A stretch of DNA of 64,000 nucleotides. It comes from Tetramitus jugosus. Taxonomy: Eukaryota; Protista; Heterolobosea. Shown in pieces: positions 10,458 to 46,173 of the stretch. Location: positions 248,001 through 312,000 of the forward strand of contig OW569349.1 of NCBI GenBank assembly GCA_937625935.1, in the 5' to 3' direction. Position 1 is the first letter of the stretch, and every line of letters begins with the position of its first letter. The translations under genes and the position numbers were made by a program. The notes under the pieces are model-generated. The model was not told the DNA's origin. It did no database searches and worked only from the letters and a program-made list of their open reading frames with translations.

Positions 10458-11240
10458 TTATTCGTCTGCAGTCTTGGCTCCTTCGACAGCCGTGTTCTCT
10501 TGAGACGTCTCTTCACTCTTTTCCTCTTTGTCATTCTCCTCTTGTTCTGCACTCTCATTCGCTTCTTCCTCTTCTTTACCTTCCTCTACGTCGCTCTCTT
10601 GTGCGCCAGATATTCCCAGATCCTCGAAAATGGTCTCGACATGCGTTTTTGGGTTCACTTTGGACAAGTACAGCTTTTCAATCACACCATTCTCATCAAT
10701 AACAACCGTAGCTCTCTTTGCACCCTTTCCACGTGTAGATTTCATCCCATAGCTATTAATCACTGTCATATCACTATCACTCAGCAAATGATAAGGGATT
10801 TGCTTCTTCGTTGTTACGCCTAGATGACTCTTCTCACTGTCCATACTCACTCCCAACACCTCTACATTGTTATTCTTAAATGTATTGTAATGATCTCTAA
10901 ACGAGAGGCACTCTGTCGTGCAACCAGGTGTATTGTCCTTTGGATAAAAGAACAGTACTAATTTTTTGCCGCGAAAATCAACCAGCGAGTGTAATTTTCC
11001 GTTCTCGTCGGGAATCTTTTCAAAAATAGGCGCTGAAGAACCGACTTTGAGCTCTACTGTACTCGCAGTGACAGTCTTTGTGGTTTGAGTCTTCTTCTGT
11101 GTTTGTGATGAAGTTTTAGCCTTCTTATGTGGTCGCTTTGTGCCATAGTCTTCATCCGCACTATCATCAGATTTCGGTTGTCTCTTTCGTAAATTGTAAG
11201 TCGATGTACTCTTGCTGGCTGATCTTCTCGTTGTTGGCAT
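10458..11240 (-). CDS. Peroxiredoxin Q/BCP family (Dot5-like), basic N-terminal and acidic C-terminal extensions
   Basis: LVLFFYPKDNTPGCTTECLSFRD peroxidatic motif, VLGVSMD, LLSD, RATVVIDENGVI. Confidence 0.9.
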   Translation of the reverse strand: MPTTRRSASKSTSTYNLRKRQPKSDDSADEDYGTKRPHKKAKTSSQTQKKTQTTKTVTASTVELKVGSSAPIFEKIPDENGKLHSLVDFRGKKLVLFFYPKDNTPGCTTECLSFRDHYNTFKNNNVEVLGVSMDSEKSHLGVTTKKQIPYHLLSDSDMTVINSYGMKSTRGKGAKRATVVIDENGVIEKLYLSKVNPKTHVETIFEDLGISGAQESDVEEGKEEEEANESAEQEENDKEEKSEETSQENTAVEGAKTADE

Positions 11241-11520
11241 CTTTCTCTTGAAGGTTGATAATGTGCTGTGATCTCAACTACAATTTTCTTTTGTTTGAAC
11301 TGGCCGTTGGATCAAAAAACAAAGCTCCTCGAAAAATGCGGGGCAATATAAATCCATTTACTCCGAGACACTTTTTTTTCTTTGAGCTCAAACAGAAGAA
11401 TTCGATAAGAAACTCTCACATTCCAACGACTGCTGCTTGTGTGAATTGAACTCAACAACAACCAAACAAACAACTACATTACTTGAATTTCGATTACTAC
11501 GTTATTATTATTACTTGAAA

Positions 11521-12190
11521 ATGTCTGGCATGGCTCAAAAGAGATTGATGGAGGAGAGAAAGGCATGGAGAAGAGATCATCCATATGGATTCTGGGCTCG
11601 TCCAGTGACCAATGACGACGGTACCATGAATCTGTTGAAATGGGAAGCTGGTATTCCAGGAAAGCAAGGCGTAAGTAACTCTTTTTTTTTTGTTGTTGTT
11701 GTTGCTCGTGTTGAAAGCTTTTTGAGCTTTTGTTGATTGTTGGGCAGTGTGTGATGAGAAAAAAGCTAACATTTGTTGTTGTTCCTGATGTTGATGTTGT
11801 GGATATATGTACGAATACACCTAATATCTACTGACTTATCTCTCTGCTGCTACGATCATATGATAGACAATGTGGGAAGGTGGTGAATACAAGTTGGTGC
11901 TTGAATTCCCTGAAGATTTTCCACAGAAGCCTCCAAGATGCAGATTCACTCCAGTTCTCTTCCATCCTAATGTATACCCTAGTGGCACTGTCTGTCTAAG
12001 TATTCTGAATGAGGATTATGATTGGAAACCAGCATTGAACTTGAAGCAGGTTTTAACGGGCATTCAAGACTTGTTGGACAACCCAAATCCAAACGATCCT
12101 GCTCAAGCTGAACCATATCACCTCTTTATCAACAATAGAGAAGAATATATGCGAAGAGTGAAGAAGATTGCTCAGGATAGTCGTCCATAG
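11521..12190 (+). CDS. UBC9: SUMO-conjugating enzyme UBC9; exons 11521-11670 and 11867-12190
   Basis: [24 protein letters not shown] and [16 protein letters not shown]; GTAAGT...TAG intron 11671-11866 in phase 0. Confidence 0.96.
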
Positions 12191-42892: not shown

Positions 42893-44636
42893 TTACTTGT
42901 TGATTGCGTTGGTGAGAACAAGGAGATGAGCCTCCAAAATTTCGAGCGCTTGGTCAGCGAGAAGTCTGGATTTGGCTGAATTGACCCAATCTCTCAGGAC
43001 AAACTCAACGTCGGAGACTTGCTCGCTGTTCAGACCATAGAGTCCTTCTTCTGTTCGTTGGTCGTAGTTTCTTCGATAAATATTTTCCAGTTCAGCAATA
43101 GCTTCACTTAGCTTTCTATTTTCGAGGTAGAACTCAGCACGAGCCAATGACGCATCGACAGTGTTACCTTCAACAAATCCCCGTTCTTCCATTACAAACA
43201 AGGTGGCAACTCTTGCATACAAGTATCCAAACAATGTATTGGATGGGGAGTAAGCAGCTCTGATGGCCTTCTTCTTCACAACCTTGAATCGATCTGCCAA
43301 ATCATCAACCTTTGGAACACCATTGACAACCAACTCTTGTGGAATAGAGTCCAAAATAGAGTGTACCAACTCGTCCTCCTTTGCAAGCTTTCTCAAAACA
43401 TCAACTTCTGGCTTAAATGGAGCATTTGTTCTCAAAATGTGTTGGAGAGCCAAGACACCAGATGTATATTGCTGAAGGGAGAAACTGTCTTGCAAATATC
43501 TAATGTTCGTTTGATATACATATTCTAGACCGTAGACCTTGTTTGATAAGTCTCTCAAGACTTCAGCACGTGACAACTTATCTTCATTGAATGCGAGGTA
43601 GAGTTCATGTTCCTTGTCTTCAATAGCTCTACGCTTCTTTTCCTCTGCAATTTGATTTGCTTCTGCCAATTTGGCTGCGACTTGTGCCTATTCGAAAAGA
43701 GAAGAATTGTTGTTTAGAAAAATGAGATTCTTGCACAAACAATGATCATTGCAATCACAATAAAAACAGATATAATACATACTTCATGTTCATCAATTTG
43801 AGCTTGCAACTTTTGTTCGTATTCTTGCTTCAAACTGGCCAATCTCTCCTCATTCTCTCTCAACAAGGTTTGCAATTGATCGACTTGACTCTGTAGAGTA
43901 GATGCCTTTGCTTCAACTGAACGCAATTCACTCTCCAACTGACTCTTGACGCTCTCCAATTGATCATGACCCTTCTTCGCTTCCTCTTCCAATTGTTGAT
44001 TCAAGTTTGCAATTTGATTCTGATAAATAGTTTGCTGTTCTACAAATTTTCTCAATTGATCCTCCAATAGTGATTGTTCGTCTTGTTGAAGCTTTTGTTG
44101 CAATTCAATTGCTGCAACAGATCTACTACTATCATCTTGTTCATGAGTTGTTGCTGCATCAGTTGCAACTGATTCAGTTTGTTGATCAAATAGGGCGGTG
44201 TTTGAAGTTGCTGTAGCTTCTTCTTCATTGATGTAATGAGTTGGTTGTTCAGCAGTGATTGTTGGTTCTTCATCAAGTGGAACAGATGTGACAACATAGT
44301 TGGATGATGGTTGTTGTTGTTGTTGAATTGACTGTTGTTGTTGTGATTGTTCATCCTTGTTGTTCAATGCTTCGGTAATCTTGTAACCAGCACCCATCAT
44401 TACAGCTCCGACACCAATCAGGAAGAGAGGTTGAGAGGTGATACTACGCTTAGTGTTTCCTGAAACAACATTTTGGAGCAATCTCTGTGATAATGGCAGA
44501 AAAAAAGTATTTTAGCTTTTTTCAATGAAATCGGCGTAAAATGAGGGAATAAAAATCAAACCTTTTGTGAGTTTTGAGCAGGAGCTGTGTTGATTAGCCT
44601 GTTCACAGTGTGTGCTTGTCTGATGGCTCTGCGCAT
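42893..44636 (-). CDS. MIC60: MICOS subunit MIC60/mitofilin; exons 44636-44562, 44484-43783, 43687-42893
   Basis: Presequence MRRAIRQ, one TM helix, coiled coil, mitofilin domain (PFKPEV, GVPKVDDLADRF, LARAEFYLE, DWVNSAKSRL); introns of 77 and 95 nt in phase 0. Confidence 0.88.
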
Positions 44637-44746
44637 GGTGTGATGATTGTCAATGTGTTATCAAAAAATGTTTTTGCAAGTTGTTGATCCTCAGCAAGCG
44701 GTGATTTTTGTTTGGGGAAAATTTATTGGCGGAAAAATCGGGTTGA

Positions 44747-45934
44747 CTATCGGGGAGAAACTGTCTCAAGCATCTCTGCATACATTGGACTCTTTTGAAA
44801 TCGAGAGTAGGTGTCTCTCAGGTTGGTGTTTGTCAAAATTGTGACTACTTCTTCAAAGAAGAAGTAATCTGGGTTTTCTCCCTCCGTTTCCATCTTTTCC
44901 TCCAATTTTCGCAGAGTCTCAGCTCCTAGATTGACCTGCAAGTGTGAGGAAGGACGAACGAACTTGTTGTATATCGATTTAATCTCACTCACCCGTTCTT
45001 CCGTTTTATCTAGTGACTTGTACTTGTTGCACTCTTCATACATTAGAATGTTCTCAATGGAACATTCTTTCAGAGCAAAGGACTTGAAGTACTTTCTCAT
45101 GACGTCATGCTCTAGTACTTCTCCAATCGAATATGTGAGTGAAAAATCTGGTGCGAAATCCATTTCGTTCGGTTGTTGTGCAAAACAAGCCAATCTTGAC
45201 CTAGGTGATTTTGCTATCCTTGGGCTAGCTATATTCAGAGAATCTAAGAACTCGCCAAACAATCCTGTGTCTTCAATCATGTCTTGCAGAGGACCGCTGC
45301 TACAAAATTCAGATGTGCAACCAATTTGAGATGGATGAGAAACAATATTGCCAACATCCATCGCTTCTGTAAAGTTCACGTAATAGTAGGCGCTCGAAAC
45401 AACTTCCTTTTCCACGAAAAAGTATGCTTGAACTCTCTTTGCATACTTATCTCGGGCAACATTTTGCAGTCCAGTACTATCCTCTACCATCTTCTTGTTC
45501 TTGAGGATTTTTGGCAAATTGACAAGCATCTTGGCCACACTGGTGTTACCTACTTCAAAATAATTGTAAAAGAATTCACCAGTAGGATCTTCGACTCTAA
45601 AAATCTTTTGAGCTACAGGCTGAACAGGCTTGTATCCTTCGTATGAAGCAAAATGTTGGTTGGCTACATCTTTCTTCTCAGCATGCACGAACACTGGGAT
45701 GATATTGCACTGGAGGAGAGCTTTATATATTTTGCTAATCTGGTACACGGCATACCTGCAAAAAATACAGCCGATATGTCTGAGCAGAACAACCATGACC
45801 TTGTACTTTCGACTCAACTCGAGTACGGACTTGCCAGCCAGTGGAGAGTTGTAAATGATCATCTCTTGCAGTACTTCCTTTGGTACCTTCAATGGAAATT
45901 GGTTAATCTTGGTATCGACAGTATCTGTTGTCAT
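44747..45934 (-). CDS. Peroxiredoxin-like 2 (AhpC/TSA-2, CxxC) domain fused to an RGS domain
   Basis: N-terminal VVLLRHIGCIFCR ... DP..FY..F; C-terminal YFKSFALKECSIENILMY, IYNKFV, QVNL, RDTYSRFQKSPMY. Confidence 0.85.
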   Translation of the reverse strand: MTTDTVDTKINQFPLKVPKEVLQEMIIYNSPLAGKSVLELSRKYKVMVVLLRHIGCIFCRYAVYQISKIYKALLQCNIIPVFVHAEKKDVANQHFASYEGYKPVQPVAQKIFRVEDPTGEFFYNYFEVGNTSVAKMLVNLPKILKNKKMVEDSTGLQNVARDKYAKRVQAYFFVEKEVVSSAYYYVNFTEAMDVGNIVSHPSQIGCTSEFCSSGPLQDMIEDTGLFGEFLDSLNIASPRIAKSPRSRLACFAQQPNEMDFAPDFSLTYSIGEVLEHDVMRKYFKSFALKECSIENILMYEECNKYKSLDKTEERVSEIKSIYNKFVRPSSHLQVNLGAETLRKLEEKMETEGENPDYFFFEEVVTILTNTNLRDTYSRFQKSPMYAEMLETVSPR

Positions 45935-45991
45935 CTTTTAGTACTTGTTTGCTTTTGTGTGTGTTTGGTCGTGGGATATTTTACTTGAAGA

Positions 45992-46112
45992 GGGATTTCG
46001 AAAAGTCAATGCCGTGTGAGAGGGGTGCTTGTCATCTGCCACACCGAAGTCCCACCGAGAGCCTCTTCGAGGTCCCCTCAGTTCACATGCCGCTGGCATC
46101 ATTCTAAATCCC
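45992..46112. other. Structured GC-rich intergenic element (nested inverted repeats; candidate ncRNA or foldback element)
   Basis: GGGATTT/AAATCCC, ATGCC/GGCAT, GTGTGA/TCACAT and GAGGGG/CCCCTC are nested, with an apical CCTC/GAGG hairpin. Confidence 0.4.
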
Positions 46113-46173
46113 CGATCACGGATGAAAAAAATTTCTTTTGGTGTTTTCTTTCGACAAAAACCAAATAGGAACA

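What the first reader, a model, noticed from the sequence alone, without database searches (positions are those of the whole stretch)
44747..45934. Thioredoxin-fold (PRXL2/AhpC-TSA-2, CxxC) domain fused to an intact RGS domain: candidate redox-gated G-protein GAP
Seen: one intronless 395-aa ORF with LLRHIGCIFCR (CxxC at 45758-45769) in the N-terminal half and a full RGS box in the C-terminal ~125 aa. Established: PRXL2/FAM213/SelU-type proteins are normally stand-alone redox proteins, and RGS domains accelerate GTP hydrolysis by G-alpha. The G-alpha-contact motifs (SxEN, VNL Asn, D[S/T]YxRF) are all retained here. Inference: the dithiol could couple oxidant status to heterotrimeric G-protein shut-off. 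I do not know of this architecture being characterised.
Basis: partly seen in the sequence, partly recalled or inferred. Interest (0 to 1): 0.85.

Follow-up and report, generated by a model that had tools for sequence, protein, structure and literature searches.

The report
Redox-type CxxC domain fused to RGS
This soil amoeba gene is real and expressed. It joins a peroxiredoxin-like domain carrying a conserved cysteine pair to a standard "off-switch" (RGS) domain for G proteins, a design kept across Naegleria-type amoebae that may link oxidant levels to cell signalling but has never been tested.

Summary
Window 44747-45934 (-) is one uninterrupted 395-aa ORF.

- **RGS domain:** Residues 271-387 are a canonical RGS domain (Pfam E 1.5e-18). 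The model superposes on RGS4 from its G-alpha complex at 1.3 A, and all classical G-alpha-contact residues are present.
- **N-terminal domain:** Residues ~9-204 form a complete peroxiredoxin-like thioredoxin fold with CxxC (C56/C59). Pfam AhpC-TSA_2 does not match the query itself. NCBIfam "SelL-related redox protein" does (E 9e-12, below its cutoff). A family profile hits human PRXL2B (E 4e-7), and fold search gives Z 14-15 to peroxiredoxins and PRXL2B.
- **Not unique:** The genome has two paralogs, which the scan's first readers already noted on other pieces (s1-541901, s1-542013). It also has a fourth, unrelated AhpC-TSA-RGS fusion. At least 34 cluster representatives share the layout; every named one is from Naegleria or Acrasis, filed only as "RGS domain-containing protein".
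- **Conservation:** C56, C59, H84 and the catalytic RGS Asn are among the most conserved positions.
- **Expression:** Soil metatranscriptome contigs cover the whole ORF without joints. The strain differences are 25 synonymous to 13 non-synonymous.

Redox gating of GAP activity remains an untested inference. I found no description of this fusion in the searchable literature. I class it as a new variant of a known kind (lineage-specific sensor-RGS fusions) of moderate interest.

The parts
44747..45934 (-). Complete 395-aa ORF (stop codon included) encoding the two-domain protein
   Evidence: In-frame stop two codons upstream of the ATG. No joints in the RNA-derived contigs.
45323..45910 (-). N-terminal peroxiredoxin-like thioredoxin-fold domain (aa 9-204), SelL-related / Prx-like2 type
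   Evidence: NF040769 E 9.2e-12, 44.9 bits. Family profile against PRXL2B (9us9) E 3.7e-7. AF2 pLDDT 82.7-85.9. Foldseek top hits are PRXL2B. VIA Z 15.4 to PrxQ and 13.9 to PRXL2B over residues 9-204.
45758..45769 (-). CxxC motif (C56-I-F-C59) at the N-terminal end of predicted helix 57-68
   Evidence: Invariant in A2. In 30 full-length fused proteins C56 is invariant and C59 is kept in at least 90%. Both cysteines are kept in 33 of 37 fused proteins.
45683..45685 (-). His84, conserved family-wide at the end of the strand that follows the CxxC helix
   Evidence: Invariant in A2. At least 90% in A1 and A3. Not conserved in PRXL2B (alignment).
45302..45319 (-). Second cysteine pair (C206-x4-C211) just after the fold
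   Evidence: In alignment A2 it is present only in the query's sub-clade: the query, the C50 paralog, P0002, P0003 and P0004. pLDDT about 67-71.
45125..45322 (-). Inter-domain linker (aa 205-270): two short helices (216-234), then a disordered stretch (235-256)
   Evidence: AF2 secondary structure and pLDDT.
44774..45124 (-). RGS domain (aa 271-387)
   Evidence: Pfam PF00615 E 1.5e-18. Thirty-four of the 41 PDB sequences matched at E<=1 are RGS chains, best E 6.5e-9. Foldseek to 1agr RGS4: TM 0.93, rmsd 1.3 A. Eighth-best RGS score of at least 119 in this genome.
45050..45061 (-). S292-x-E294-N295, equivalent to RGS4 S85/E87/N88 (G-alpha switch contacts)
   Evidence: Alignments. E294 is kept in 36 of 37 fused proteins.
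44930..44932 (-). Asn335, equivalent to the catalytic-site Asn128 of RGS4
   Evidence: Conserved in 33 of 37 fused proteins and at least 90% in A3.
44798..44815 (-). D374-T-Y-S-R378-F379, equivalent to RGS4 D163-S-Y-T-R167-F
44710..45961 (.). Footprint of a 1251-nt contig from a soil metatranscriptome that covers the whole ORF plus 27 nt upstream and 37 nt downstream
   Evidence: record 2 of run X1. Records 8 (X2) and 11 (X3) cover most of it. No contig lies on 45964-46146.

Best explanation
The gene encodes a soluble two-domain signalling protein of a family conserved in heterolobosean amoebae. The C-terminal domain is a canonical RGS domain; it most likely binds GTP-loaded G-alpha subunits (this genome has about 20 G-alpha genes) and speeds their GTP hydrolysis. 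The N-terminal domain is a complete peroxiredoxin-like thioredoxin fold of the SelL-related / Prx-like2 (PRXL2) type. Its CxxC sits where PRXL2B has its catalytic dithiol. Most likely mechanism (inferred, not shown): C56 and C59 cycle between dithiol and disulfide in response to oxidants or a thioredoxin-type partner, and this state changes how well the tethered RGS domain can act on G-alpha. The protein would then work as a cytosolic redox input to the G-protein cycle, on the same 'sensor-RGS' logic as the many other RGS fusions of these amoebae. Shown here: the ORF, both folds, retention of the RGS contact residues, conservation of CxxC and His84, presence in RNA libraries, and purifying selection. 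Inferred: redox activity of the CxxC, GAP activity, and any coupling between the two.
For: - **One gene:** A single ORF with an in-frame stop upstream.
- **RGS domain:** Pfam E 1.5e-18, and the model superposes on RGS4 from its G-alpha-i1 complex at rmsd 1.3 A. S292, E294, N295, N335, D374, R378 and F379 are all canonical.
- **N-domain:** NF040769 E 9.2e-12. The family profile hits PRXL2B at E 3.7e-7 over nearly its full length. Z is 15.4 to PrxQ and 13.9 to PRXL2B. ESM-Atlas neighbours are AhpC-TSA_2 / SelL-related clusters.
- **Family:** Thirty-four external cluster representatives plus three genes in this genome share the same domain order. Named members come from Naegleria gruberi, N. fowleri, N. 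lovaniensis and Acrasis kona.
- **Conserved positions:** In 30 full-length members the invariant positions are C56, E294 and F360. The near-invariant ones are C59, P80, H84, E86, L274, I321, N335 and F379, so the redox motif and the RGS active surface are kept together.
- **Clade:** All fused N-domains lie on one side of a branch with 98% support, apart from the stand-alone, mostly bacterial proteins.
- **Expression and selection:** RNA-library contigs span both domains with no joint and stop at the gene's borders. The 38 strain differences are 25 synonymous and 13 non-synonymous, and none touches the key residues.
- **Context:** The genome has at least 119 RGS matches and about 20 G-alpha genes. 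Some Naegleria G-alpha subunits are self-activating, so GTP hydrolysis by RGS proteins is the regulated step (PMC9283941). N. gruberi has 229 RGS proteins with lineage-specific architectures (PMC3971589).
Against: - No biochemical data exist for any family member.
- The query misses Pfam AhpC-TSA_2 and AhpC-TSA entirely, and its NF040769 score (44.9 bits) is far below the 120-bit cutoff.
- The conserved cis-proline column of the fold is Gln169 in this protein, and the 'PDY' motif of its relatives is altered. This copy is therefore the more divergent one. PRXL2B also lacks that proline.
- Four of 37 fused proteins have lost one or both cysteines.
- The domains are joined by a linker with about 20 disordered residues, and I could not inspect inter-domain contacts.
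- A conserved CxxC is equally compatible with an enzyme role or a metal site.
Confidence: 0.4

Rival explanations
1. The thioredoxin-fold domain is the output and the RGS domain is an address label. RGS binding to activated G-alpha recruits a thiol-dependent reductase to sites of active G-protein signalling. That reductase might act on lipid or endoperoxide substrates as PRXL2B does, or be a protein-disulfide reductase.
For: The closest solved relative, PRXL2B, is a CxxC-dependent enzyme (entry titles). CxxC, His84 and Glu86 are conserved like catalytic residues. RGS domains serving as G-alpha-binding modules in effectors are described for the N. fowleri RGS-RhoGEF (PMC9283941).
Against: The RGS domain keeps the full set of residues tied to GAP catalysis, including Asn335, in 33 of 37 members. 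A pure anchor would not need this. The query has lost the cis-proline loop that most relatives keep.
Confidence: 0.22
2. The N-terminal domain is a redox-inert scaffold or a metal-binding module. The Cys-Cys-His triad would bind zinc or iron, and the domain would mediate protein-protein contacts, much as the redox-dead thioredoxin fold of phosducin does in G-beta-gamma regulation.
For: C56, C59 and H84 are conserved together, a pattern also seen in metal sites. The cis-proline is missing in the query; from my own knowledge, that proline has been reported to preclude metal binding by the active-site thiolates of thioredoxin-fold proteins. A second Cys pair (C206/C211) follows the fold in this sub-clade.
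Against: The same C-C-H pattern is invariant in the stand-alone, mostly bacterial SelL-related proteins, which keep the cis-proline. CxxC at the start of the first helix is the classical redox position. No structural evidence for a metal site was obtainable.
Confidence: 0.15
3. The fusion is an artefact: two adjacent genes read as one ORF, or an untranscribed pseudogene.
For: None found. The tool notes that contigs from RNA libraries cannot by themselves prove transcription.
Against: One uninterrupted frame. The same domain order occurs in 36 other proteins from at least four named species. RNA-library contigs span the domain junction and end at the gene borders, and all four runs share the same loose end at 44562 in the neighbouring gene, possibly a splice junction. 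The substitution pattern indicates purifying selection.
Confidence: 0.02

Closest known systems
R4-type RGS domains (RGS4, RGS1, RGS16, RGS8; PDB 1agr, 2gtp, 2ik8, 2ode)
   Same: Same helical fold (TM 0.83-0.93 by target, rmsd 1.3-1.8 A). Same G-alpha-contact residues: the SxEN loop, the catalytic Asn, and D-S/T-Y-x-R-F.
   Different: About 20-28% identity. It carries a 200-residue N-terminal redox-type domain instead of the short amphipathic N-terminus of R4 proteins. Its G-alpha partner is unknown.
PRXL2B / prostamide-prostaglandin F synthase (PDB 9us9, 9usa) and the PRXL2 (SelU, FAM213) family
   Same: Nearest solved structure by sequence profile (E 3.7e-7) and by Foldseek. CxxC at the same place in a peroxiredoxin-like fold with a helical insertion. 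Both lack the cis-proline.
   Different: Only 15-18% identity. His84 and Glu86 of the amoeba family are not conserved in PRXL2B. PRXL2 proteins are stand-alone. The query does not reach any Pfam AhpC-TSA_2 score.
SelL-related redox proteins (NCBIfam NF040769), bacterial stand-alone CxxC proteins of about 175 aa
   Same: Best curated family hit for the N-domain (E 9.2e-12). Shared motifs: L-R-H-x-G-C-x-F-C, V-H and D-P.
   Different: The score (44.9 bits) is well below the cutoff (120). The fused eukaryotic domains form their own clade. The stand-alone proteins have no RGS, and their function is also untested as far as I know.
Sensor-RGS fusions of heteroloboseans and plants (7TM-RGS of N. fowleri, AtRGS1)
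   Same: Same logic: an input domain attached to an RGS output that controls self-activating G-alpha subunits (PMC9283941). Heterolobosea are known for lineage-specific RGS architectures (PMC3971589).
   Different: Here the input is a soluble thiol-redox-type domain, not a membrane receptor. I found no paper listing this combination.
Phosducin / phosducin-like proteins; and O2/NO-dependent N-degron turnover of RGS4/5/16 (both from my own knowledge)
   Same: Phosducin shows a thioredoxin fold serving G-protein regulation. Oxidation of Cys2 in RGS4/5 shows that oxidant or oxygen status can control RGS output.
   Different: Phosducin's fold has no CxxC and binds G-beta-gamma. The N-degron route acts through degradation of a terminal cysteine, not through a fused redox domain.

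Membership tests
RGS domain (Pfam PF00615) | Profile match above the curated cutoff | tested here: met
   67.8 bits against a cutoff of 23.9, E 1.5e-18, covering 3-116 of 117 profile positions.
RGS domain (Pfam PF00615) | All-helical RGS fold superposable on solved RGS domains | tested here: met
   AF2 pLDDT 93-97 over aa 270-390. 1agr RGS4: TM 0.93, rmsd 1.3 A over 119 columns.
RGS domain (Pfam PF00615) | G-alpha switch-contact residues (RGS4 S85, E87, N88, N128, D163, R167) | tested here: met
   S292, E294, N295, N335, D374 and R378, by alignment to RGS14/RGS10 and within the family. The RGS4 numbering comes from my own knowledge of the 1agr complex.
RGS domain (Pfam PF00615) | GTPase-accelerating activity on a G-alpha subunit | not testable with these tools
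   Needs a single-turnover GTPase assay.
Prx-like2 / PRXL2 (Pfam PF13911 AhpC-TSA_2) | Profile match above the curated cutoff | tested here: not met
   No hit at E<1 for the query. Thirty-eight of the 128 aligned sequences (query, two paralogs and 125 relatives) match PF13911 and 73 match PF00578.
Prx-like2 / PRXL2 (Pfam PF13911 AhpC-TSA_2) | Peroxiredoxin-like thioredoxin fold with CxxC at the start of the first long helix | tested here: met
   C56 precedes helix 57-68. Z 13.9 to PRXL2B and 15.4 to PrxQ over residues 9-204. Profile against 9us9: E 3.7e-7.
SelL-related redox protein (NCBIfam NF040769) | Profile match above the curated cutoff (120 bits) | tested here: not met
   44.9 bits, E 9.2e-12, covering only profile positions 15-109. 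Stand-alone relatives score 112-152 bits.
Typical peroxiredoxins (Pfam PF00578 AhpC-TSA) | PxxxT/SxxC peroxidatic motif and a profile match | tested here: not met
   No PF00578 hit for the query. The residues before C56 read L-R-H-I-G, with no Pro or Thr/Ser at the motif positions.
Thiol-disulfide oxidoreductase activity (any thioredoxin-fold CxxC protein) | Reversible dithiol/disulfide exchange at the CxxC | not testable with these tools
   Needs thiol trapping and a redox-potential measurement.

The most novel reading that the evidence does not exclude
The CxxC/His domain is a genuine oxidant (peroxide or lipid-peroxide) sensor that allosterically switches the tethered RGS domain. It would be a soluble 'redox receptor-GAP', and the roughly 30-member family would be a dedicated redox input layer to the self-activating G-alpha subunits of heterolobosean amoebae, including Naegleria fowleri.
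Probability: 0.3. Interest if true: 0.7.

Novelty: new variant of a known kind. Interest (0 to 1): 0.5.

Why it matters
Heterotrimeric G-protein signalling is usually pictured as driven by receptors. In Naegleria-type amoebae and plants, some G-alpha subunits load GTP on their own, and control sits at the RGS step. A conserved family that ties a thiol-redox-type domain directly to a fully equipped RGS domain would be a simple, testable case of oxidant status feeding straight into G-protein shut-off. It would also give a first functional handle on the SelL-related / PRXL2 group of CxxC proteins, whose cellular roles are mostly unknown. Orthologous family members exist in the pathogen N. fowleri, whose G-protein system is under study. 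Against that, these amoebae carry 100-200 RGS proteins with many odd fusions, so one more fusion is not in itself surprising.

Tried and rejected
- **The search for homologous proteins:** With the whole protein it found nothing, and with the family alignment it found only one protein. This is a limit of the word index, not evidence of absence; the exhaustive HMMER search found 125 relatives.
- **Complex prediction:** The N-domain (1-234) against the RGS part (257-395) gave no verdict (score 0.25, mark 0.34, alignment not used). This is no evidence either way.
- **Model geometry:** I could not obtain model coordinates or PAE. The C56-C59 geometry and inter-domain contacts are therefore unexamined. 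The pTM of 0.86 for the full chain is only a hint of a defined orientation.
- **Literature:** Searches for RGS plus AhpC, thioredoxin-like or Naegleria, and for the accession numbers of the named orthologs, returned nothing relevant. The one paper most likely to list such a fusion (Anantharaman et al. 2011, Gene 475:63, PMC3396428) is not held, so prior mention cannot be excluded.
- **Synteny:** The nearest relative's contig (P0002, L010) shows no shared neighbours.
- **RGS co-descent:** The C50 paralog's RGS domain is the query's best match in the genome, but only marginally (49.8 against 44 bits). This is inconclusive.
- **Rejected readings:** a gene-model artefact, and a typical peroxidase.

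Full report
**1. The observation**

The ORF listing returns a 395-aa ATG-started ORF at 44747..45934 on the minus strand. The sequence shows an in-frame TAA two codons before the ATG, so the frame cannot extend upstream without an intron. Pfam finds one significant domain: RGS at residues 271-387 (67.8 bits, cutoff 23.9, E 1.5e-18). A search of PDB sequences matched 41 distinct sequences at E<=1. Thirty-four are RGS chains (best E 6.5e-9); the other seven are weak xylanase matches at E>0.3.

One correction is needed. Pfam AhpC-TSA_2 and AhpC-TSA do not match this protein at E<1.

**2. The organism and its signalling background**

Earlier notes of this scan describe the genome (26.35 Mb, 56 contigs) as a soil amoeba related to Acrasis and Naegleria. 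That fits what I found: every named relative of this protein comes from Naegleria or Acrasis.

The genome holds at least 119 RGS-domain matches and roughly 20 G-alpha genes. The RGS domain studied here is the eighth best-scoring of them. Published work reports 229 RGS proteins in N. gruberi, with lineage-specific architectures (PMC3971589). For N. fowleri it reports 28 7TM-RGS proteins, 79 further RGS-domain proteins and one RGS-RhoGEF, together with self-activating G-alpha subunits whose GTP hydrolysis is the regulated step (PMC9283941).

**3. The N-terminal domain**

- **Sequence relatives.** An exhaustive HMMER search with residues 1-230 against 1.84 billion representatives gave 125 hits at E<=1e-3. 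I aligned them with the query and the two paralogs, 128 sequences in all. Of these, 73 match Pfam AhpC-TSA, 38 match AhpC-TSA_2 and 27 match Redoxin.
- **Curated family.** The stand-alone relatives of about 175 aa match NCBIfam NF040769 'SelL-related redox protein' at 112-152 bits. The query's own N-domain hits the same model at E 9.2e-12 (44.9 bits, below the 120-bit cutoff).
- **Solved structures by sequence.** A profile of 28 N-domains (A2) hits human prostamide/prostaglandin F synthase (PRXL2B, 9us9) at E 3.7e-7 over nearly its whole length.
- **Predicted structure.** AlphaFold2 models are confident: pLDDT 85.9 and pTM 0.86 for the full chain, and 82.7 for the domain alone. C56 sits just before helix 57-68.
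- **Fold comparison.** Foldseek ranks PRXL2B first for the isolated domain, followed by PrxQ/BCP, Prx5, Prx6 and AhpC. VIA-align gives Z 15.4 to PrxQ and 13.9 to PRXL2B across residues 9-204.
- **Language-model neighbours.** ESM-Atlas feature neighbours are bacterial AhpC-TSA_2 / SelL-related clusters.

The domain is therefore a complete peroxiredoxin-like thioredoxin fold of the CxxC (Prx-like2) kind. SelL-related proteins are its nearest sequence family and PRXL2B its nearest solved structure. It is not a typical peroxidase, because the PxxxT/SxxC motif is absent.

This copy is somewhat divergent. The cis-proline column of the fold is Gln169 here, where most relatives have Pro, and the C-terminal 'PDY' motif is altered. 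PRXL2B also lacks that proline.

**4. The RGS domain**

The model superposes on RGS4 from its AlF4-G-alpha-i1 complex at TM 0.93 (by target) and rmsd 1.3 A. HMMER alignments to RGS14 and RGS10 and a family alignment place the contact residues as follows:

| Query residues | RGS4 equivalent |
|---|---|
| S292, E294, N295 | S-x-E-N loop |
| N335 | catalytic Asn |
| D374, T375, R378, F379 | D-S-Y-T-R-F |

The RGS4 numbering is from my own knowledge of the 1agr structure. Nothing in the sequence suggests a degenerate, non-GAP RGS domain.

**5. A conserved family, not a single gene**

- **Paralogs.** The same genome has two paralogs with the same order of domains: L002 1498-2877 (459 aa) and L003 1054-3225 (723 aa). 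First readers of this scan had already noted both on other pieces (s1-542013, s1-541901).
- **Outside this genome.** Of the 125 external relatives, 34 carry a C-terminal RGS domain, always after the CxxC domain.
- **Named members.** They include N. gruberi XP_002674500 and NAEGRDRAFT_51045, N. fowleri XP_044565711 and XP_044557576, N. lovaniensis XP_044544941 and XP_044555750, and at least six Acrasis kona proteins. All are annotated only as RGS or hypothetical proteins.
- **Cysteines.** The CxxC is intact in 33 of 37 fused proteins.
- **Most conserved positions.** In an alignment of 30 full-length members the invariant columns are C56, E294 and F360. The near-invariant ones are C59, P80, H84, E86, L274, I321, N335 and F379. 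The redox motif and the RGS active surface are thus the most conserved parts of the protein.
- **Tree.** A quick maximum-likelihood tree of 83 N-domains puts all 32 fused rows on one side of a branch with 98% support, together with 10 rows without a detected RGS. Several of those are short proteins from short metagenome contigs. The 41 stand-alone SelL-related proteins lie on the other side. This fits one old fusion followed by paralog expansion. The tree was the quick version and is midpoint-rooted, so a single origin is not proven.
- **RGS co-descent.** Inside this genome the RGS domain of the C50 paralog is the query's best RGS match, but only marginally.

**6. Expression and selection**

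Logan contigs from three soil metatranscriptome runs of different studies, plus one run of uncertain type, lie on the gene. A 1251-nt contig covers 44710-45961, which is the whole ORF with 27 and 37 nt of flank. Contigs of 1044 and 1054 nt from the other two runs cover most of it. None has a joint, and none lies on the intergenic stretch 45964-46146. In the neighbouring downstream gene, contigs of all four runs have the same loose end at 44562; this may mark a splice junction, which would fit an RNA origin. Contigs cannot give strand or level, and the tool warns that DNA can be present in RNA libraries, so this is good but not final evidence of a single transcript across both domains.

The contigs differ from the window by about 2%. 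Of the 38 listed differences, 25 are synonymous and 13 are not, with no frame breaks and no change at C56, C59, H84 or the RGS contact residues. By my rough estimate this corresponds to dN/dS near 0.15-0.2, that is, purifying selection.

**7. How it most likely works**

Shown here: a transcribed single gene, two confidently folded domains joined by a linker with about 20 disordered residues, a complete RGS catalytic surface, and a CxxC plus His conserved for as long as the family has existed.

From established knowledge: RGS domains with these residues accelerate GTP hydrolysis on G-alpha. CxxC at the start of the first helix of a thioredoxin fold is the classical dithiol/disulfide exchange site, and it is the catalytic site of PRXL2B.

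Inferred: the redox state of C56/C59 alters the GAP output, either through contacts with the RGS domain or through changes in partners or oligomeric state. I put about 0.4 on this reading as a whole, and about 0.3 on true allosteric redox gating.

The main rivals are:
- an enzyme recruited to active G-alpha by its RGS domain (0.22);
- a redox-inert or metal-binding scaffold (0.15).

An artefactual fusion is essentially excluded.

**8. Comparison with what is known, and novelty**

The kind of protein (a lineage-specific input domain fused to RGS in Heterolobosea) is well described. This particular input is not mentioned in any paper I could search. Standard Pfam scans see only the RGS domain in most members, which would hide the fusion from architecture surveys. 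The paper most likely to have noticed it (Anantharaman et al. 2011) was not available. I rate it a new variant of a known kind. Interest is moderate: a clean, testable link between thiol redox and G-protein shut-off, in a lineage where unusual RGS fusions are the rule.

**9. Also seen**

A fourth gene (L011 748-2220, 490 aa) joins a different thioredoxin-fold domain to the best-scoring RGS domain of the genome. That domain has a W-C-G-N-C motif and matches Pfam AhpC-TSA at 54.9 bits, above the cutoff. Its Acrasis homologues are stand-alone 302-aa peroxiredoxins. A redox-type CxxC domain has therefore been joined to RGS at least twice in this lineage. Together with the scan's unverified notes on haem-PAS-RGS and FSP1-RGS fusions, this adds some weight to a sensor-to-RGS reading.

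A predicted-complex test of the two domains gave no verdict and is not used as evidence.

Noticed in passing
L011 748-2220 (-) = G000:C21, about 10547-12019: A 490-aa ORF joins a different thioredoxin-fold domain (W-C-G-N-C motif; Pfam AhpC-TSA 54.9 bits and Redoxin 36.1 bits, both above cutoff) to the best-scoring RGS domain of the genome. Relatives that carry the RGS domain are only unnamed metagenome proteins (97% and 51% identity). The Acrasis kona homologues are stand-alone 302-aa peroxiredoxins. This looks like an independent, younger redox-RGS fusion.
   Followed up: partly
L002 1498-2877 (+) and L003 1054-3225 (+): Two paralogs of the studied gene have the same CxxC-domain-then-RGS layout (459 and 723 aa). 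The longer one has a His- and Ser-rich N-terminal extension and a long low-complexity linker. First readers already noted both as s1-542013 and s1-541901.
   Followed up: partly
window 45302-45319 (-): A second cysteine pair (C206-x4-C211) lies directly after the thioredoxin fold. It is conserved only in the query's sub-clade (the query, the C50 paralog, P0002, P0003 and P0004). It could be a resolving pair or a metal-binding pair.
   Followed up: no
window 44562: Contigs of all four runs laid on the window break at the same base, with the same loose sequence, inside the downstream neighbour. This is probably an intron border of that gene.
   Followed up: no
G000:C14, about 210-398 kb: Several G-alpha matches cluster on one contig (about 210, 315, 385-398 kb), suggesting tandem or segmental duplication of G-alpha genes.
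   Followed up: no
window 44710-45961; P0001: Near-identical sequence of this organism (about 98% at the DNA level; the N-domain of the C50 paralog is identical to metagenome protein P0001) recurs in soil metatranscriptomes and a JGI metagenome. The amoeba or close strains are therefore present, and probably active, in sampled soils.
   Followed up: partly
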